26,564 nucleotides of DNA, from IMG/VR virus record IMGVR_UViG_3300005859_000008, positions 1-26,564 of that record; one strand, given 5' to 3'. The position numbers and the translations under genes are program-made. The notes beneath the pieces are model-generated. The model ran no database searches. It was given only the letters and a program-made list of their open reading frames with translations, and had not been told where the DNA came from. This document shows, piece after piece, positions 7,791-25,555 of the stretch (position 1 is the stretch's first letter; each line of letters begins with the position of its first letter).

Positions 7791-8726
7791 CTATATCTCA
7801 AGTTCTAATTCATCTTTTTCTTTCTTTATCTTTTTCTTTTCCTTTAAAATTTCATTTACAATTTTGTAATTTCTAATTAATTCAATTGTAAGGCTGTCAA
7901 GACCTATCTTTCTTAATTTGTTAGCATATCTTGTGTATTTATTGTCAATTTGCCATTTATTGTATACTAGAATATAAGCGTTCATAACTTCTAGAATTTT
8001 TCTGTTAGTCAAATCATATTCAAATGGAAAATGAATCTTGTCTAAAAATTCAAAAAGTTGTTCTTTTTCTTCTTCCGTAATTTTATACCTTTCTCTACTT
8101 GTTTTTTGATTTCCTACATATTTTCTTGTTCCATCAAACCAAAAAATCTCTCTATATGCCATAGTTTTGGAATATGTAGCTGTGTCCATACTATCCGCAA
8201 AATCGAAAGCTTGTAGAAAATATGGTGCAGACATTCCAAGGACATGTAGATAAGGGACTTTCCTTCTTACATAATAAACCCATGGAAATGTATAGATTAA
8301 AACTTTTAATTTGCTAGATGCTACAAGTCCTCCTATTGCAAAATAGTAAGTATATTGTTTGTAAAAATCTATAGCTTCATCTACATCTTGAATTGGATAG
8401 ATATGGATAACTGGAATAATTTTTTCTATCCATTCTATTTTTGTATACAAGTATTCAAAATATTGAAAATTTCGTTTGTCTAGAGGAGAAAACATACTTG
8501 CAATATCAAGAGAAAAAAAAGCATATGCATCTAATTTTTTGTATTTTTCTAGAATGTCTTTCACAGAAATATGTAGACCATATAATGCAATTTGGTAACC
8601 TCCGCTATCTATCCAAGTCTCATTTTTCCATGTCTTTTTTCTAAATCTTAACTGATTAATTAGAATCGGAAAGTCAGTCTTCAGAATATATGATGTTGTT
8701 GAACTTAGACCAAAGACAAGTTTCAT
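7791..8726 (-). CDS. tRNA-guanine transglycosylase (TGT)-fold protein, SIRV2 ORF310-like (311 aa)
   Basis: TGT-superfamily motifs IDSGGYQ, FSLD, IPVIH, IGGLV, HVLG, DSMD. Size and pairing with the permease match SIRV. Confidence 0.88.
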   Translation of the reverse strand: MKLVFGLSSTTSYILKTDFPILINQLRFRKKTWKNETWIDSGGYQIALYGLHISVKDILEKYKKLDAYAFFSLDIASMFSPLDKRNFQYFEYLYTKIEWIEKIIPVIHIYPIQDVDEAIDFYKQYTYYFAIGGLVASSKLKVLIYTFPWVYYVRRKVPYLHVLGMSAPYFLQAFDFADSMDTATYSKTMAYREIFWFDGTRKYVGNQKTSRERYKITEEEKEQLFEFLDKIHFPFEYDLTNRKILEVMNAYILVYNKWQIDNKYTRYANKLRKIGLDSLTIELIRNYKIVNEILKEKKKIKKEKDELELEI

Positions 8727-9919
8727 TATTGTTCTCCATTAATCACCTTCTTTCTTAAGACGTATATAATTCCTCCAATTAAAGGCAATAGTAATATTCT
8801 TAATATTGTATATATTAGATTTCCTTCTATTACGAAATTATAGAATATTGGGTTTTGAAGTCCTAGATAAAAGAATATAAATATCTGTAGTGCTAAACTT
8901 ATTATTACACTTAAAAATAATAATTTATTATTTGTTAATTTTAAAAATGTTAAACTTACAATTAAGAAATTCCAGAAAATGAACAATATACCAGTAAATC
9001 CAAATGAAATTGAAAATCCTAAAAGATTTTCTAAAACGTTAGCGATTGTATCAACAGTAAAGATTAACAATAAAATGTTAGGCGTAAGTTTTGTAAATTT
9101 TTCTGGGAGAATTCTATCAAATGTAAAGTTTTGAATTAAACGACTTTGAATTATAGCATTCACAAAAAGATAGCTTAGATACCAGATTGGAAATAAAGCA
9201 AACAATATATTCAAATTAGAAAAGCTATCTAATATTGATAATATTGTAACTACTAAATAACTTCCAAAATATCCAATTTTTATTGCTTTATTTACGTTCT
9301 TTACTTCTCCAGCTATATAACTAATTGCATTTATGAATAGAAACATAGACAAGTCAAATAGTAAGGCTGAAAGTAAGGTATTCGATATTGTGAAGTTTTG
9401 TATCTGGAAATGAAAATTTGAGACTGGGAGAAATATTGATACAAGTATCTGTAGAATAGCTAATCCGTCTACTATATAAGCATAAATTGATTTTCTAATT
9501 ATACTAATTATAGTTATTATAAATAATAATTCTGAAATTAGAAATTTATCAATTAGTGAAATATTAAAATTCATAAGTACTAAATTTGTTAGGACTGGAG
9601 CTGAGAATATATACGTTAGCCATAACGAGATTCCGAAAATTGTGTAGAATTTCGGGGAAAATGTATTTCTAATGTAAGCATAATCCCCACCGTTTAATGG
9701 AATTTTCTTGGTTAGAATATAATACATTACTAATAATGGAATTTCAAATATTGCTCCTAATATTACAGCAATTAACAAGTTTACATTTTTCATCATTTGA
9801 GAGACAAAAATTGGATAACTTATTCCGCTCAAAATTCCCATGTAAAGAAGATTGATAGAAAAAATATCTAATGAATTGAAATTTTTTATAATTCCTGAAC
9901 TTTGTCTTTTGAATTCCAT
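8726..9919 (-). CDS. APC-family amino acid permease-like membrane protein, SIRV2 ORF399-like (397 aa)
   Basis: Many TM segments; APC motifs PLNGGDYAYIRNTF and SYIAGEVKN; stop overlaps the TGT start (TAATG). Confidence 0.88.
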   Translation of the reverse strand: MEFKRQSSGIIKNFNSLDIFSINLLYMGILSGISYPIFVSQMMKNVNLLIAVILGAIFEIPLLVMYYILTKKIPLNGGDYAYIRNTFSPKFYTIFGISLWLTYIFSAPVLTNLVLMNFNISLIDKFLISELLFIITIISIIRKSIYAYIVDGLAILQILVSIFLPVSNFHFQIQNFTISNTLLSALLFDLSMFLFINAISYIAGEVKNVNKAIKIGYFGSYLVVTILSILDSFSNLNILFALFPIWYLSYLFVNAIIQSRLIQNFTFDRILPEKFTKLTPNILLLIFTVDTIANVLENLLGFSISFGFTGILFIFWNFLIVSLTFLKLTNNKLLFLSVIISLALQIFIFFYLGLQNPIFYNFVIEGNLIYTILRILLLPLIGGIIYVLRKKVINGEQ

Positions 9920-10039: not shown

Positions 10040-10465
10040 TTAAGAAAGAAATTTTAAAATGTCATTTGTATCTTTTAACAATTCTATTTTTTGTCTGGAA
10101 TAATTTTTCAGATGATAAAGTGCATGTGGAAATTTCGCATTTCCCATTCTATTCATAAATATCATTATTAAAGAATTTTGTTCATATAACATTCTAAACC
10201 AGGAAGGAGTAGGGTCAAATGGTAGATATAATAAAACTTCACTTCCATTTTTATTACTTTCTATAGCTTTTATTATAAATGGTTTTTTAATAGAAAATGG
10301 TGGGTTACAATAAGAATGATTTGGCCATAATTTTTCTACTGCATTGAATTTAGTTTTATCTAAACAAACGTCTATAAATTTTAATTCATTTGTAATAATA
10401 TTATAAACTGCTTCAGGTGTTGGTTTATTGTCATGTATAGCCCTTTTCGGATATTTAAGTGTCAT
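10040..10465 (-). CDS. Phage-type DNA N6-adenine methyltransferase (Dam-like, PF05869-type; 141 aa)
   Basis: PTPEAVY, IDVC, catalytic YCNPPFS, KA, then LYLPFDPTPSWF, in the order typical of the small phage Dam family. Own TTTAATTTGTC promoter. Confidence 0.82.
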   Translation of the reverse strand: MTLKYPKRAIHDNKPTPEAVYNIITNELKFIDVCLDKTKFNAVEKLWPNHSYCNPPFSIKKPFIIKAIESNKNGSEVLLYLPFDPTPSWFRMLYEQNSLIMIFMNRMGNAKFPHALYHLKNYSRQKIELLKDTNDILKFLS

Positions 10466-13832: not shown

Positions 13833-14375
13833 ATGCCTATAAATTTCAAAGATTATTTCTGTAAGTTAGAATGTTGTTATTGGCATGAATTTGAACAAGC
13901 TTATGGAAAATTAAATGTAAAAGATAGAACAGTTACGATAATTGGTAATGATTGTGGAAGTACAGTGTTATACTTTTTACTAAAAGGTGCTAAAAGAATT
14001 GTTGGATTTGAAAAAGAAGAAAAACTAAATCAGCTGTTCAAAGAAAAAGTTTGTAAAGACTTCAATATCTGTGACAAAGTTGAGATTCATGGGGAATGGA
14101 CTGGAAATCTATACCCAGACACTGACGTTCTAGTTATGGATTGTGAGGGTTGTGAGGCCAAGTTACTTGAAGTTAAGGCCGAACGAAGTGATGAACAAAG
14201 TTCATCACGAAGTGAGTCAAAACTTGATATTTCACAACTTCAAAAGTATAAACAGTATTGCATAGCCGTACATGATTGGACAGAAAATAGATTCGAATTA
14301 ATGAGAAAACTTTACGGAACAACTTTAACTTTTATAAGTGAAGATAATAGGGAATTTGTATTTTGTAAATTATGA
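13833..14375 (+). CDS. SAM-dependent FkbM-like methyltransferase, SIRV ORF158b-like, with a 20-aa insertion (180 aa)
   Basis: Motif I IIGNDCG, RIVGFE, VMDCEGCE (cf. FkbM KIDxEGxE); AGGTGA SD. Confidence 0.88.
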   Translation: MPINFKDYFCKLECCYWHEFEQAYGKLNVKDRTVTIIGNDCGSTVLYFLLKGAKRIVGFEKEEKLNQLFKEKVCKDFNICDKVEIHGEWTGNLYPDTDVLVMDCEGCEAKLLEVKAERSDEQSSSRSESKLDISQLQKYKQYCIAVHDWTENRFELMRKLYGTTLTFISEDNREFVFCKL

Positions 14376-17865: not shown

Positions 17866-18681
17866 TCAAGTTTTGAAATTTTTCATATATTCTATAACTT
17901 TCATAATATCAAGATGTGTATCTTTTTGGATTTGTAATATGTAATTTTGGTCTTGTAAAATCTGTAATATTTTATCTTTGTTTTGTACAAAGAAATTATA
18001 AAGTTCTGGATGATTTTGATACCAATCATTTTTTCCATTTTTTAAATCATTATCAATTTCTCCAAGAAGAAACGCTAATTGTCTAACATCAATTTCTTTT
18101 CTAACTGATTTAAATATTACTCCTAGTACAGAGAAATAGGGTTTATACTTATAGAGACACATGTTAAAATTTCTTCCTTCTTTACAACTTACTTTCTTCG
18201 GATTATAAATTTTAGCTACTAAACCCTCAAGTCTTTCTTTAGTTATAATTTCAATTAAATCATCTATGTCAAGATAAAATTCTGGAAACCAATTCCAAAT
18301 TGTACTATCTAATCTTAAGGGATGTACATATTTTCCAAGCTCTTTGTCAAAGACATCATATATGATAAATTGTGGAATTTCATTTGTATGGATTTGTAAT
18401 GCTGACGTCTTTTTATGTACAAGTTCCCCATGAATTATATATTGTGAATGTTCTTTTAAATAATTTACAACTTCCTCAATTCCTGGAACTTTCATAAAGA
18501 GTTCTTGAAAAGATTTGTCATGAGGTATATCTTTTCTAGTATTTATTTCTAATATTCCTTGATATTTCAAACAAATATGTGTTCCGTCATATTTTATTTG
18601 ATAATATACATCTTCTTCTAGATTTTTTAAATCTTGATAACTTATATTTTCAGCTTCGTAATGACATAGATTTGTTTGCAT
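17866..18681 (-). CDS. ATP-dependent RNA-ligase-type nucleotidyltransferase (271 aa)
   Basis: Motif I KYDG, Ia TR, III HGELV, IIIa FIIYDV, IV EGLVAK, V YKYK. Short helical-looking C-terminus with no obvious OB fold. Own TAAATAAATTTGTC promoter. Confidence 0.85.
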   Translation of the reverse strand: MQTNLCHYEAENISYQDLKNLEEDVYYQIKYDGTHICLKYQGILEINTRKDIPHDKSFQELFMKVPGIEEVVNYLKEHSQYIIHGELVHKKTSALQIHTNEIPQFIIYDVFDKELGKYVHPLRLDSTIWNWFPEFYLDIDDLIEIITKERLEGLVAKIYNPKKVSCKEGRNFNMCLYKYKPYFSVLGVIFKSVRKEIDVRQLAFLLGEIDNDLKNGKNDWYQNHPELYNFFVQNKDKILQILQDQNYILQIQKDTHLDIMKVIEYMKNFKT

Positions 18682-22411: not shown

Positions 22412-22621
22412 TTAGGATTTTTCTTCTTCCTCTACTTTCACTTGCATTTTTCTCATTTCTTTAACAATTTTTACAACTTCTAAAGCTTTTTGGAAAACTT
22501 CAGATTTTCTAACATTTTCATCATCACATGTCGCTAAAGCCATAGTCAAATCGTCAAGAGCTAGATATAGTTTAGCTATTGTCTCTGTATTCGAATTTGA
22601 CTTTCTTTTGTTTTCTGACAT
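22412..22621 (-). CDS. Conserved rudiviral helical protein, SIRV ORF69/70-like (69 aa)
   Basis: Overlaps the 3' end of the resolvase gene, as in SIRV; size match. Confidence 0.75.
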   Translation of the reverse strand: MSENKRKSNSNTETIAKLYLALDDLTMALATCDDENVRKSEVFQKALEVVKIVKEMRKMQVKVEEEEKS

Positions 22622-22937
22622 CTTGAGTCAGATTATAAATTATGACACTTTTATGTTTTTTATAATGTACAATTACTAACGGTCTACATGAACAAAAACT
22701 AAACATCTCACAAAATTCAAACAGTTTTTCTATTTGAAAAATATCTACAATAACGAAATCTTTAGATGTGGATTTTACTTCGATTGGAAAAATTGTATTA
22801 TCTTTCGTAGCTATGATATCTGGAATAGCCTGTTTTCCAGTTCCAGATACTGGTATTCTGATAGCGTTATAACCATTTTTATCTAAAAACTCTAATGTTT
22901 TATATTCATAATATTTTCCAGATTGTCTAATATTCAT
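22572..22937 (-). CDS. hjc: Archaeal-type Holliday junction resolvase (Hjc/Hjr, SIRV ORF121-like; 121 aa)
   Basis: GKYYE, RIPVSG, PDIIA, IEVKST (PD-(D/E)xK) motifs; ATG 22937. Confidence 0.95.
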   Translation of the reverse strand: MNIRQSGKYYEYKTLEFLDKNGYNAIRIPVSGTGKQAIPDIIATKDNTIFPIEVKSTSKDFVIVDIFQIEKLFEFCEMFSFCSCRPLVIVHYKKHKSVIIYNLTQDVRKQKKVKFEYRDNS

Positions 22938-22956
22938 CAAAACAAATTTAGAAATT

Positions 22957-23295: not shown

Positions 23296-23574
23296 TTATT
23301 TCTGTACACATAACTTATATTTTCCGTCTTTATAAACAAAAATATAAATTGCATTTTCTATGTAACGTTTAAAGTCTTCTTCATTTAAAGTTAATCTTTT
23401 TATATGTTCATCTTCTATTTCTTCCCATGTTTTATCATCTAAATTTATAGCAAACTCATCTACAATATCATCATCTGTTAGTACGCTTATGACATCTAGA
23501 TATAAATCATAATTTCCTTCCTTAAAACATTCTAAATTCTCAACTTCTTTATCTATAATTACTACAGATGTCAT
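23296..23574 (-). CDS. Acidic hypothetical protein (~92 aa)
   Basis: ATGA overlap with the GNAT stop favours ATG 23574; D/E-rich. Confidence 0.72.
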   Translation of the reverse strand: MTSVVIIDKEVENLECFKEGNYDLYLDVISVLTDDDIVDEFAINLDDKTWEEIEDEHIKRLTLNEEDFKRYIENAIYIFVYKDGKYKLCVQK

Positions 23575-24032
23575 TTTAACCATTTCACGAAAATTGGATG
23601 TCCAGTCCTGTTTGTCTTTCCTACTTCTTGAAATCCAGCTTTCTTGTACAAAGCGTTAGAATGACCTGGAAATCCCAAAGTCCATAGGACTTCAAATCCG
23701 TCATTCTTAAGTTTTTGTGATAAGTCAATTAGAAAATTTACAGCATAATCTCCTGGAGCTGTTTTCGTAACTCTTCTAATAAAATATGATCTGTCAGATG
23801 GAATATTATGATGTTGAGCTATATAACGGAAAGGAGTGTTGTCATGAAGCCAAGCTACAGCTACAATAAAATCTTGTTCTCCGTCGTTAGCTATATACAT
23901 GAAATATCTAGAATTTTTTCCAGCTCCCCCTCCCATTGGCATTTTTTGAGAATGATAATAGTTTATTAACATTCTAACAAATTTTATAGTTTTTTTATCT
24001 TCTGCCTCTTCAATTCTAAACTTAAGTTCCAT
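23571..24032 (-). CDS. GNAT-fold acetyltransferase, SIRV ORF154-like (Mom-like features; 153 aa)
   Basis: VAVAWL, FIRRV and NALYKKAGF GNAT motifs; size and synteny; TATATATTTGTC promoter. Confidence 0.85.
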   Translation of the reverse strand: MELKFRIEEAEDKKTIKFVRMLINYYHSQKMPMGGGAGKNSRYFMYIANDGEQDFIVAVAWLHDNTPFRYIAQHHNIPSDRSYFIRRVTKTAPGDYAVNFLIDLSQKLKNDGFEVLWTLGFPGHSNALYKKAGFQEVGKTNRTGHPIFVKWLK

Positions 24033-24142
24033 ATATTTTCAAAACAAATTATGACAAATATATACTTATTGTTGTGAATATAATTAGGACAAATTATGTT
24101 TTCTCTTTAAAATTTATGTAAGTTTTCAATAATATTTCAATT

Positions 24143-25555
24143 ATGGGAAAGAGAAGAGGTAATAGAAATATAGCATCTATGAAATATCATCTATACAATA
24201 AAGTGTTAAATAGAAAAAATTTCCCAGCTTTTTCTGTAATGTTTAACGCTGGAGTTGAATCTGTTCTTCCAACTCCGTTAGAGAATATTCAAGTTCCTCC
24301 TGGAATAAATACTAATTATGGAATTGCTTACGCTACAATTATTTCATCTTTACTTTCTGCATTAAACAATCTAGCAATTTCTACGTTTAACAAAAATACA
24401 AATGTGCAAAGTTTTCTAAAATTAGGACAAAGTTCAATATTCTATTCAAATTTTGGACAGATGTCTGGAATTGATTTCGTTAATAAATTCACACAGCTTT
24501 ATGATGATTATGTAGACCTTTGTCATGTCTTATATCAGCCAGCTGTATTTGATGAGACATATTTTGACCTCTCTGTCTTCCAGCCAGCTTTTGCTATTGA
24601 AAATAGAAATGAGGCATGTAAAAAGATAGAAAAATATTTTGATAGTTTAACACATTCAAATGTTTCTATAGATTTAACGACACTTGGTTTTGGATATACT
24701 AATATTCCAAATGTAGACAATTACTCATTTTCAAATATTCAAAATACTGGAATTTCAGATTTGTTAAATGCACTTAATTTAAATTTTAATCAACTTCCAG
24801 ATTTAGCTAAATTTATAGTCTCATTTATTCCAAATCTAAACGACATAATAAATAGTGGATTTGCTTTAGACGTCGGATGGTTAGACAGATGTGTTTTAGC
24901 TCCAGAAATCAAAGAAACTTCAAGTTACAAAGTACAACTTAGAAACGGCATGATTTTGCAAAACTTTGCTAATGTTTTCGGTATGGTTTTAGATTATGTT
25001 CCTCTTGACTTAGCAATTTTAATTCCAGAATTTAATCCAAATGATGTAACTCTTGACAATTTAATTTCTATATTAACAGCTGATAAAACTGTTATTTCTA
25101 TTTTCGGAAACCTATTCAAACTACATTTATATGACCCATCTCCTGGCGGAGTAAACATAACTTACAGTTCAGAAATTGAAAATTATGCTGTTTCATACCA
25201 ACAATATCTTCAAATACAAAAAGTTGTAAATAGAAAATATTCAAACGTTTGGTATGCTAAAATGATAGCCTCAGCAATTTTAGAAATTGCCAGATATCCG
25301 TATCAACAAAACTACAGTTATTCGACTGGAAAAAGGACACTTCCATATTCTGAGTTTTTGAATTATTGGAAAACAAAATGGAAATTCTACGGAGTTACAG
25401 ATGAAGATTTACAATTTGCTCAACAATATGGTGAGAAAATACAAGGACAAGCCAAAATAGAAAATTCCTTAAAATTAGCTCAAAAAAGTGCAAAAGCTAA
25501 AGAATATAAGCCAATCTTTTACTACAAAAACTTTAAAAATATAGCTCAGAGATAG
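24143..25555 (+). CDS. Minor structural protein, SIRV ORF486/488-like (470 aa)
   Basis: Basic N-terminus; repeated FD...D motifs; divergent from the GNAT gene as in SIRV. Confidence 0.88.
   Translation: MGKRRGNRNIASMKYHLYNKVLNRKNFPAFSVMFNAGVESVLPTPLENIQVPPGINTNYGIAYATIISSLLSALNNLAISTFNKNTNVQSFLKLGQSSIFYSNFGQMSGIDFVNKFTQLYDDYVDLCHVLYQPAVFDETYFDLSVFQPAFAIENRNEACKKIEKYFDSLTHSNVSIDLTTLGFGYTNIPNVDNYSFSNIQNTGISDLLNALNLNFNQLPDLAKFIVSFIPNLNDIINSGFALDVGWLDRCVLAPEIKETSSYKVQLRNGMILQNFANVFGMVLDYVPLDLAILIPEFNPNDVTLDNLISILTADKTVISIFGNLFKLHLYDPSPGGVNITYSSEIENYAVSYQQYLQIQKVVNRKYSNVWYAKMIASAILEIARYPYQQNYSYSTGKRTLPYSEFLNYWKTKWKFYGVTDEDLQFAQQYGEKIQGQAKIENSLKLAQKSAKAKEYKPIFYYKNFKNIAQR

What the first reader, a model, noticed from the sequence alone, without database searches (positions are those of the whole stretch)
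23571..24032. Core acetyltransferase has a Mom-like motif pattern: possible DNA adenine hypermodifier
Seen: LINYYHSQKMP near the N-terminus, FIRRV, and LWTLGFPGHSNALYKKAGFQEVGKT. Known: Mu Mom-family GNATs show xxHY(S/L), ELxRL and SYAD..GH.G.IY.A.NW.Y.G.T, and modify DNA adenines. Inference: this conserved rudiviral GNAT may act on DNA rather than protein. With Dam and the TGT-fold enzyme it would form a three-layer genome-modification system. The similarity was judged by eye only.
Basis: inference. Interest (0 to 1): 0.6.

Follow-up and report, generated by a model that had tools for sequence, protein, structure and literature searches.

The report
Rudivirus core GNAT, Mom/DruA-like branch
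A small enzyme gene found in all rod-shaped archaeal viruses of this family encodes an atypical acyltransferase that resembles the phage DNA-modifying enzyme Mom and its relatives as much as ordinary acetyltransferases, but it lacks several parts Mom needs, so DNA modification is possible and unproven.

Summary
ORF 23571-24032 (-) encodes 153 aa carrying all three quoted motifs. It is a conserved core gene of Rudiviridae (SIRV2 ORF154; PHROG 8069) and folds confidently as a GNAT (pLDDT 92.8).

The Mom likeness is more than an impression:
- Language-model neighbours are all Mom/XF1762 clusters, then DruA.
- The ESM-Atlas shape search ranks DruA (TM 0.82-0.85) and Mom (0.80) above classical Acetyltransf_1 (0.75).
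- hhalign to diverse Mom-like proteins gives 83% (E 9e-6) and to DruA 86%.

Against membership:
- hhalign to classical Acetyltransf_1 is as good (93%).
- The Pfam Mom and DruA models do not match.
- Mom's essential HTH-like insertion is absent.
- Mom-family invariants E108 and D149 and catalytic S124 are not conserved. Only the His after helix 1, Arg111 and Tyr159 are.

Verdict: a separate archaeal-virus GNAT family that bridges classical GNATs and the Mom/DruA/XF1762 branch. It is not a Mom orthologue, and its donor and acceptor are unknown. The "three-layer system" is unsupported: the GNAT is universal, the TGT-like gene patchy, and the Dam-like gene unique to this genome.

The parts
23571..24032 (-). 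CDS of the 153-aa GNAT-fold protein (P0001), stop codon included; orthologue of SIRV2 ORF154, PHROG 8069
   Evidence: AF2 model pLDDT 92.8, pTM 0.87
23937..23969 (-). End of helix alpha1 and start of the loop (LINYYHSQKMP, residues 22-32). Y26 and H27 are invariant; H27 aligns with Mom H58
   Evidence: secondary-structure register
23910..23936 (-). Gly-rich loop MGGGAGKNS (residues 33-41) that takes the place of helix alpha2. Family consensus is PxGGGAG[KR]; this is the part of the model with lower confidence
23790..23852 (-). End of strand beta3 plus an approximately 18-residue, helix-containing connection to beta4 (WLHDNTPFRYIAQHHNIPSDR, residues 61-81). It is highly conserved (W61 H63 D64 T66 P67 F68 A72). 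Mom has a connection of the same length and type; it appears as an insertion relative to classical GNATs
23769..23783 (-). Strand beta4 core FIRRV (residues 84-88). R86 and R87 are invariant and are the only nearly invariant residues of the wider family. R87 aligns with Mom R111; F84 stands where Mom-like proteins have invariant E108
23745..23762 (-). beta4-alpha3 loop TAPGDY (residues 91-96). It stands in place of the classical Q/R-x-x-G-x-G/A pyrophosphate loop, and no member of the family matches that signature here
23613..23687 (-). beta5-alpha4-beta6 block LWTLGFPGHSNALYKKAGFQEVGKT (residues 116-140). H124, Y129, F134, G138 and T140 correspond to GH..Y..(F/W)...G.T of Mom-like proteins. 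F121 stands where Mom-like proteins have invariant D149
24033..24142 (.). 110-bp AT-rich divergent intergenic region between the GNAT gene and the 470-aa ORF (24143-25555, phrog_7238); presumed promoters of both genes
   Evidence: Inference only: no promoter test was run
22572..22940 (-). Holliday junction resolvase (Hjc) gene, a conserved near neighbour of the GNAT gene in SIRV2, SSRV1, SIRV11 and here

Best explanation
The gene encodes a single-domain GNAT-fold acyltransferase that is a core protein of Rudiviridae, with distant relatives on other archaeal-virus-like contigs. It forms its own narrow family. In sequence and structure space the family lies between classical acetyl-CoA N-acetyltransferases and the atypical Mom/DruA/XF1762 branch. 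That branch includes Mom, which transfers glycine from Gly-tRNA to DNA adenine, and DruA-type domains found in the Druantia defence system and fused to transposases. The rudiviral family shares the branch's build: one N-terminal helix ending in an aromatic-His pair and no helix alpha2; an approximately 18-residue, helix-containing connection between beta3 and beta4; a Pro-containing beta4-alpha3 loop instead of Q/RxxGxG/A; an invariant Arg on beta4 at the position of Mom R111; and the GH..Y..F/W...G.T block. It lacks Mom's HTH-like DNA-binding insertion, Mom's basic C-terminal tail, and Mom-like invariants E108 and D149 and catalytic S124. Most likely mechanism (inferred, not shown): an activated acyl group is held in the beta4/beta5 cleft and passed to an amine of a nucleic acid or a nucleic-acid-bound target during infection. 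The donor would be acetyl-CoA bound in a non-canonical way or, as in Mom, an aminoacyl-tRNA 3' end. R87, H27, Y129 and the H63-D64 pair would line the site. It is not a Mom orthologue, and carbamoylmethylation of adenine is not supported.
For: Shown. The gene is real and core. The GNAT fold is confident. The family is isolated: only 34 of 1.84 billion representatives reach E<=1e-3, and none carries a Pfam domain. In the hhalign matrix the wider family A3 scores 82.9% against Mom-like proteins (125 columns), 86.4% against DruA (128 columns) and 93.3% against Acetyltransf_1 (92 columns). Mom-like against Acetyltransf_1 scores 1.1%, and Mom-like against DruA 92.6%. Shuffled controls score <=0.5%. 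Language-model neighbours are 23/30 Mom and 7/30 XF1762; with Mom removed, 16/30 are DruA and 5/30 the phage GNAT-like family PF22559 whose clusters are labelled antirestriction, with no classical family. XF1762 is itself Mom-related. The ESM-Atlas shape search ranks DruA and Mom above Acetyltransf_1. Mom 8BV8 ties for first in the PDB. The order of secondary-structure elements is the same in both models, including the missing alpha2 and the helix between beta3 and beta4. The motif regex counts separate the rudiviral and Mom-like sets from classical sets. The Q/RxxGxG/A signature is absent from the beta4-alpha3 loop. Inferred: a nucleic-acid-linked target, from the branch's known or suspected DNA association (Mom: PMC13219725; DruA-transposase fusions), from the basic pI (median 9.3), and from the conserved position beside the Hjc resolvase gene.
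Against: The best single profile-profile score is to classical Acetyltransf_1. The only sequence-level hits in Pfam and the PDB, all weak, are classical GNATs: FR47, Acetyltransf_1 and Acetyltransf_10, and 3h4q and 2bsw. RimI and a Bacillus acetyltransferase tie with Mom structurally. No Mom, DruA or XF1762 HMM matches. Language-model and shape neighbours are leads, not homology tests. The His after alpha1 is not kept in the most distant relatives. Nothing here shows the donor, the acceptor or even catalysis. No report of modified bases in rudiviral DNA was found, though the literature search was limited.
Confidence: 0.5

Rival explanations
1. Classical acetyl-CoA-dependent N-acetyltransferase, as currently annotated for MRV1, SSRV1, ARV3 and SBRV1. 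It would acetylate a viral or host protein (capsid protein, chromatin protein, defence protein) or a small amine or amino-sugar. The Mom/DruA likeness would then reflect only a stripped-down viral GNAT core.
For: hhalign to Acetyltransf_1 gives 93.3% for the wider family and 89.2% for the rudiviral set. Weak Pfam hits of relatives are to FR47, Acetyltransf_1 and Acetyltransf_10 only. The HMM search against the PDB hits 3h4q and glyphosate N-acetyltransferase. RimI ranks at the top of the structure search. The general-acid Tyr of helix alpha4 (Y129) and the Y...GF motif B are kept. The gene is annotated 'GCN5-family acetyltransferase' in 10.1101/2020.01.16.907410. Three glycosyltransferases are also core rudiviral genes, so a sugar or glycoprotein target is conceivable.
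Against: The Q/RxxGxG/A signature is missing from the beta4-alpha3 loop of all 36 homologues, against 14/19 and 19/21 in the classical sets. No Pfam GNAT model reaches significance for the protein itself. Language-model and Atlas shape neighbours are Mom/DruA, not classical families. The invariant Arg on beta4 and the beta3-beta4 insert are Mom-branch features.
Confidence: 0.28
2. One reading: a true functional analogue of Mom that post-replicatively acylates or aminoacylates adenine (or another base) in viral DNA to block host nucleases.
For: All of the Mom-branch evidence above applies. R87 sits at the position of Mom R111, which is essential and described as specific to Mom among GNATs (PMC7261163). 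The protein is basic. The gene lies beside the Hjc resolvase gene. The genome already carries other nucleic-acid modifiers: TGT-like, Dam-like and SAM methyltransferase genes.
Against: The HTH-like insertion, whose deletion abolishes Mom activity (PMC13219725), is absent. Mom-like invariants E108 and D149 and catalytic S124 are replaced by F, F and V. The protein is 153 aa against about 190-240 aa for Mom-like proteins. No PF25680 match was found. Membership of the branch does not fix the acceptor: the function of DruA and XF1762 is unknown.
Confidence: 0.13
3. A catalytically inactive or non-enzymatic GNAT-like module that binds a ligand, nucleic acid or partner protein, as is possible for DruA-type domains.
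For: Several catalytic residues of both reference groups are missing. The closest shape matches are DruA domains of unknown activity, which are often fused to transposases.
Against: Residues that line the GNAT cleft are strictly conserved (R86, R87, Y129, H27, H63, D64) across viruses that share as little as 48% identity. This is typical of an active site.
Confidence: 0.07

Closest known systems
Mom family (Pfam PF25680; phage Mu Mom, PDB 8BV8) and the wider phage 'Mom-like' proteins
   Different: No HMM match. 153 aa against 190-240 aa. It lacks the HTH-like insertion (Mom 175-209) and the C-terminal extension with invariant Y217. E108, S124 and D149 are not conserved, and the motif reads YH instead of HY. 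hhalign to close Mu-Mom homologues is below 3%. It has a family-specific Gly-rich loop and a WLHDNTPF block.
DruA / DUF4338 domain (Pfam PF14236; Druantia defence protein and transposase-fused forms)
   Same: Best shape matches outside its own cluster: TM 0.82-0.85, 147-148 residues at 2.2-2.4 A. hhalign 86.4% over 128 columns. It is the commonest language-model neighbour once Mom is removed. DruA is itself related to Mom-like proteins (92.6%).
   Different: No PF14236 or PADLOC match. DruA domains are embedded in proteins of about 200 to over 800 aa. The rudiviral set alone gives only 1.1%. DruA's function is unknown, so the match transfers no mechanism.
Classical GNAT N-acetyltransferases (Pfam Acetyltransf_1 PF00583; e.g. 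RimI 5ISV/2CNM, B. cereus 1Y9K)
   Different: The alignment covers only 92 columns, beta2 to beta7. The Q/RxxGxG/A loop is missing. alpha2 is replaced by a Gly-rich loop. There is an extra beta3-beta4 helix and an invariant Arg on beta4. No Pfam model reaches threshold.
XF1762 family (NCBIfam NF045478)
   Same: Short single-domain proteins of about 140 aa in the Mom branch (97.2% to Mom-like). Top language-model neighbour: score 0.95, 189 of 256 features shared. Like the rudiviral protein, they lack Mom's insertion and D149.
   Different: hhalign only 62.5%, with two sequences in hand. No HMM match. XF1762 keeps E..R on beta4 and the T-R-N..S loop; the rudiviral family does not.

Membership tests
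GNAT superfamily (fold level) | Mixed beta-sheet with alpha1, beta2-4, alpha3, beta5, alpha4, beta6-7 topology | tested here: met
GNAT superfamily (classical acetyl-CoA users) | Motif A pyrophosphate loop Q/R-x-x-G-x-G/A between beta4 and alpha3 | tested here: not met
   The loop reads TAPGDY. 0/36 homologues match the signature there; nine match only in the alpha1-beta2 Gly-rich loop. Classical sets match in 14/19 and 19/21.
GNAT superfamily (classical acetyl-CoA users) | Motif B: alpha4 Tyr followed by x3-G-F | tested here: met
   Y129-KKA-G133-F134 in this protein. Y.{3}[GN][FW].{3}G matches 32/36 homologues.
Acetyltransf_1 (PF00583) | Match to the Pfam model above its gathering score | tested here: not met
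   No hit for P0001 at E<=10. 2 of 23 relatives hit weakly at E of about 0.02. hhalign to a 19-sequence set gives 93.3% over 92 columns.
Mom (PF25680) | Match to the Pfam Mom model | tested here: not met
   No hit at E<=10 for the protein, for 23 relatives or for the six-frame genome.
Mom (PF25680) | HTH-like insertion between beta6 and beta7 (Mu Mom 175-209), essential for activity | tested here: not met
   beta6 (135-139) and beta7 (146-151) are joined by 6 residues. The Mom model has residues 180-202 inserted there. The requirement is stated in PMC13219725.
Mom (PF25680) | H58-Y59 after helix alpha1 | tested here: inconclusive
   H27 aligns with H58 and is invariant in rudiviruses. Y59 aligns with variable S28; an invariant Tyr (Y26) precedes the His instead. 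The His is lost in distant relatives.
Mom (PF25680) | E108 and R111 on beta4 (ELNR) | tested here: inconclusive
   R87 aligns with R111 and is invariant. E108 aligns with invariant F84, so half of the motif is met.
Mom (PF25680) | P-R-N-x-E-S loop with catalytic S124 | tested here: not met
   S124 aligns with V98, and the loop reads PGDYAV. The role of S124 is described in PMC13219725 and PMC7261163.
Mom (PF25680) | Invariant D149 after beta5 (S.AD) | tested here: not met
   D149 aligns with F121, a hydrophobic position in the family. The local sequence is W-T-L-G-F/L.
Mom (PF25680) | Transfer of glycine from Gly-tRNA to N6 of adenine in dsDNA | not testable with these tools
   Biochemical property (PMC13219725). 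No tRNA gene is present in the window.
DruA (PF14236) | Match to the Pfam or PADLOC DruA models | tested here: not met
   Searches found no hit. hhalign gives 86.4% for the wider family and 1.1% for the rudiviral set. Atlas TM is 0.82-0.85.
XF1762 (NF045478) | Match to the NCBIfam model | tested here: not met
   Not among the NCBIfam hits at E<=10. hhalign gives 62.5% to two members. Language-model score is 0.95.

The most novel reading that the evidence does not exclude
The core rudiviral GNAT is a minimal, insertion-less member of the Mom/DruA branch that acylates or aminoacylates bases of the viral genome, or of replication intermediates handled by the neighbouring Hjc resolvase. That would give archaeal filamentous viruses a DNA hypermodification not yet seen in archaea, and would provide a tractable 153-aa model for what the whole Mom/DruA/XF1762 branch does.
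Probability: 0.13. Interest if true: 0.8.

Novelty: new variant of a known kind. Interest (0 to 1): 0.5.

Why it matters
This gene is one of about twenty shared by all rudiviruses, yet it carries only a generic 'putative acetyltransferase' label and has no Pfam family. Its nearest relatives turn out to be the Mom/DruA/XF1762 branch. That branch holds a tRNA-dependent DNA-modifying enzyme, a Druantia defence protein of unknown activity and transposase-fused domains. This changes which substrates should be tested first: nucleic acids and aminoacyl-tRNA, not only proteins and acetyl-CoA. The family is detectably similar both to classical GNATs and to Mom/DruA, while those two groups are not detectably similar to each other in the same test. 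It is therefore a useful bridge for tracing how the DNA-directed branch arose. If it does modify DNA, that would bear on how rudiviruses cope with Sulfolobus restriction and CRISPR systems.

Tried and rejected
- hmmscan against Pfam, NCBIfam and PADLOC, and phmmer against the PDB, gave nothing significant for the protein itself. The hits to FIST and the GRB2 SH2 domain are chance.
- hhalign against an alignment of close Mu-Mom homologues (at least 51% identical) gave below 3% with a mis-registered WLHD..P match. This was rejected as uninformative, because low diversity hid the relationship later seen with diverse Mom-like proteins.
- A second word search with the wider alignment found no Pfam-labelled bridge.
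- Genomic context of distant relatives was uninformative: virus-like contigs with glycosyltransferases and one archaeal MAG contig.
- Literature searches for SIRV2 ORF154, Rudiviridae plus GNAT, DruA plus Mom, and rudiviral DNA modification found nothing specific.
- The search for related loci with the diverse Mom alignment failed for lack of a conserved stretch.
- Not run: complex prediction, because no binding claim is made; read mapping, which cannot show base modification here; and any residue-level structural superposition, because coordinates are not exposed. Residue equivalences therefore rest on hhalign plus secondary-structure register.
- The idea that Dam, TGT and the GNAT form one system was rejected on gene distribution and distance.

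Full report
**1. What is there.**
The window is an IMG/VR virus record of 26,564 bases, about 85% complete. Its genes identify it as a rudivirus close to the North American SIRV4-11 group.

The minus-strand ORF 23571..24032 encodes 153 aa (P0001).

tblastn finds the protein in 38 phage-collection records, all Rudiviridae: SIRV1-11, MRV1, ARV2, ARV3, SSRV1, SBRV1 and SRV. Identity is 55-86% over at least 90% of its length. It is the orthologue of SIRV2 ORF154 and belongs to PHROG 8069, 'unknown function'. Some records call it 'putative acetyltransferase', and Baquero et al. list a 'GCN5-family acetyltransferase' among core rudiviral genes (10.1101/2020.01.16.907410).

An alignment of 36 homologues shows invariant Y26, H27, G34, P67, A72, F84, R86, R87, P93, L108 and F134.

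**2. Fold.**
AlphaFold2 on that alignment gives a confident model (pLDDT 92.8, pTM 0.87). Its elements are beta1 4-10, alpha1 13-26, beta2 42-49, beta3 54-63, a helix at 66-74, beta4 82-90, alpha3 97-110, beta5 115-119, alpha4 127-131, beta6 135-139 and beta7 146-151. Every structure search returns GNAT proteins.

Two departures from the textbook GNAT topology are visible. Helix alpha2 is replaced by a Gly-rich loop (residues 27-41). An approximately 18-residue connection containing a helix separates beta3 from beta4.

**3. Is it Mom-like? Evidence against family membership.**
- Pfam, NCBIfam and PADLOC give no significant hit. In particular there is no hit to Mom (PF25680), DruA (PF14236) or XF1762.
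- Mu Mom itself scores 2e-75 on PF25680.
- hhalign of the rudiviral alignment against close Mu-Mom homologues gives below 3%.
- The exhaustive profile search finds only 34 proteins in 1.84 billion representatives, and none carries a Pfam domain.
- Relatives hit Pfam only weakly, and only classical families: FR47, Acetyltransf_1 and Acetyltransf_10.
- A profile search of PDB sequences touches only classical GNATs: 3h4q at E 0.023 and 2bsw at 0.16.

**4. Is it Mom-like? Evidence for a relationship.**

(b) Structure against viral models. In BFVD the fourth hit is the 'Mom' of Salmonella phage FSL SP-031. Several other top hits are phage proteins of about 190-215 aa, mostly unnamed or labelled only NAT_SF domain.

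(c) Structure against the ESM Atlas. After the protein's own cluster, the shape search lists DruA-domain clusters (TM 0.81-0.85) and a Mom cluster (0.80). These rank ahead of the only classical Acetyltransf_1 cluster (0.75).

(d) Language-model features. All 30 nearest named clusters are Mom (23) or XF1762 (7), with scores 0.94-0.95 and 180-189 shared features. With Mom excluded, the neighbours are DruA (16), clusters without a common Pfam family (6) and the phage 'GNAT-like antirestriction' family PF22559 (5). No classical family appears. XF1762 is itself a short Mom relative.

(e) Profile-profile comparison with diverse sets. I built three kinds of alignment:
- A5: 19 diverse Mom-like proteins from phage records, including the archaeal virus HGTV-1.
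- A 16-sequence DruA set.
- Classical controls: Acetyltransf_1 and FR47.

The wider rudiviral family (A3, 23 sequences down to 21% identity) gave these hhalign results:

| A3 compared with | Probability | E-value | Columns |
|---|---|---|---|
| Mom-like (A5) | 82.9% | 9e-6 | 125 |
| DruA | 86.4% | 5e-6 | 128 |
| Acetyltransf_1 | 93.3% | 3e-7 | 92 |
| FR47 | 22.9% | 9e-4 | 44 |

In the same matrix, the reference groups compare as follows:

| Pair | Probability |
|---|---|
| Mom-like vs DruA | 92.6% |
| Mom-like vs Acetyltransf_1 | 1.1% |
| DruA vs Acetyltransf_1 | 11.3% |
| Acetyltransf_1 vs FR47 | 99.6% |

Reversed and column-shuffled controls never exceed 0.5%. The rudiviral family is therefore detectably similar to both sides, while the two sides do not detect each other. 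It behaves as a bridge.

**5. Residue map.**
The hhalign alignment agrees with the secondary-structure register of the two AF2 models.

| Rudiviral residue | Mom residue | Status |
|---|---|---|
| H27 | H58 | kept |
| S28 | Y59 | lost; an invariant Tyr precedes the His instead |
| A58 | G81 | small residue kept |
| F84 | E108 | lost |
| I85 | L109 | kept in type |
| R87 | R111 | kept; the most conserved position of the whole family |
| V98 | S124 | lost |
| F121 | D149 | lost |
| G123-H124 | the GH of Mom-like proteins | kept |
| Y129 | Y159 | kept |
| G138 | G168 | kept |

Mom's HTH-like insertion (175-209) has no counterpart. Its deletion abolishes Mom activity (PMC13219725). In the rudiviral protein beta6 and beta7 are joined by six residues.

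Both proteins lack alpha2, and both have an 18-19-residue, helix-containing beta3-beta4 link.

The classical Q/RxxGxG/A loop is not present between beta4 and alpha3. The loop reads TAPGDY, and 0/36 homologues match the signature there. Nine homologues match it only in the family-specific Gly-rich loop after alpha1.

**6. Function.**
Nothing here shows the donor or the acceptor.

What is known of the branch: Mom takes glycine from Gly-tRNA(Gly) and puts it on N6 of adenine in dsDNA (PMC13219725). DruA and XF1762 are uncharacterised. DruA domains occur in Druantia and fused to IS4-, ISAs1- and IS66-type transposases, which suggests DNA association.

The rudiviral protein is basic (family median pI 9.3; Mom-like 10.0). 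Its gene keeps a place next to the Holliday junction resolvase gene in SIRV2, SSRV1, SIRV11 and this window.

I therefore favour an atypical acyltransferase acting on a nucleic acid or a nucleic-acid-bound target, with the donor open (confidence 0.5 for the whole statement). The rivals are:
- a classical protein or small-molecule acetyltransferase (0.28);
- a true Mom-type DNA adenine modifier (0.13);
- a non-catalytic module (0.07).

**7. The 'three-layer system'.**
The window does encode the following:
- a TGT-like protein at 7791-8726 (phrog_887, E 8e-63);
- a Dam-like protein at 10040-10465 (PF05869, E 2e-8);
- a SAM methyltransferase at 13833-14375.

These are not a unit with the GNAT. 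The TGT-like and Dam-like genes lie more than 13 kb from the GNAT gene. The TGT-like gene is missing from MRV1, ARV2, ARV3 and SSRV1, which all have the GNAT. The Dam-like gene has no homologue in any other rudivirus record; its nearest relatives are in a Sulfolobus spindle-shaped virus and in Sulfolobales virus YNP1.

**8. Novelty and limits.**
The gene and its generic annotation are known. New here are its placement beside the Mom/DruA/XF1762 branch, the missing CoA-loop signature and the bridging behaviour.

Limits:
- Residue equivalences rest on hhalign and secondary structure, not on a coordinate superposition.
- The control sets are samples from one bacterial phylum.
- The XF1762 set has two sequences.
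- Language-model and shape neighbours are leads, not tests.

Noticed in passing
window 23296-23583 (-): A 95-aa, very acidic ORF overlaps the GNAT stop codon by 13 nt and so looks co-transcribed. It has no PHROG or significant Pfam match. It is absent from this position in SIRV11, where the GNAT gene is followed directly by the small antisense ORF and the Hjc gene. It is an accessory insertion of unknown role.
   Followed up: partly
window 17866-18681 (-): A 270-aa ORF with weak Pfam hits to RNA_ligase (E 4e-6, at the cut-off) and to the ATP-dependent DNA ligase adenylation domain. It belongs to phrog_12949 (unknown function). It may be a nucleotidyltransferase or ligase of rudiviruses.
   Followed up: no
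window 10040-10465 (-): The Dam-like N6-adenine methyltransferase (PF05869) has no homologue in any other rudivirus record of the phage collection. Its nearest relatives (61-68% identity) are in a Sulfolobus spindle-shaped virus and in Sulfolobales virus YNP1, which suggests exchange between unrelated archaeal viruses.
   Followed up: partly
window 7791-9919 (-): A TGT-like gene (phrog_887) is directly followed by a 397-aa permease-like gene (phrog_8289 'aminoacid permease'). SIRV4 and SIRV11 annotate the same pair. The TGT-like gene also occurs in STSV1, STSV2 and a Sulfolobus tengchongensis spindle-shaped virus, but not in MRV1, ARV2, ARV3 or SSRV1.
   Followed up: partly
window 23910-23936 (-), residues 33-41: The family-specific Gly-rich loop PxGGGAG[KR] follows the YH motif. 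In 9 of 36 homologues it reads RGGGAG/A and so matches the Q/RxxGxG/A pyrophosphate-loop signature, but in the wrong place in the fold. It may be a phosphate-binding loop; this is unexplained.
   Followed up: partly
L022 (Microbacterium phage Appa) 495-1228; L019 (Arthrobacter phage Sicarius2) 1-1064: In actinophages the Mom-like gene (annotated 'acetyltransferase') sits directly after a ParB-like nuclease-domain gene. In Appa it is also followed by a tRNA-Gly(ccc) gene. That is a striking neighbour, given that Mom uses Gly-tRNA(Gly).
   Followed up: no
L010 (Halovirus HGTV-1) 492-1474: An archaeal tailed virus carries a Mom-like gene (31% identical to Mu Mom over the core) two genes upstream of an RNA ligase gene. 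Mom-branch enzymes are therefore already present in archaeal viruses.
   Followed up: no
L006 (archaeal MAG contig WAOI01000044.1) 6694-7170: A distant relative of the rudiviral GNAT (P0199, 158 aa) lies at the end of a contig whose other genes look cellular (MarR-type HTH, YdjM, NTP transferase). The family may not be strictly viral.
   Followed up: no
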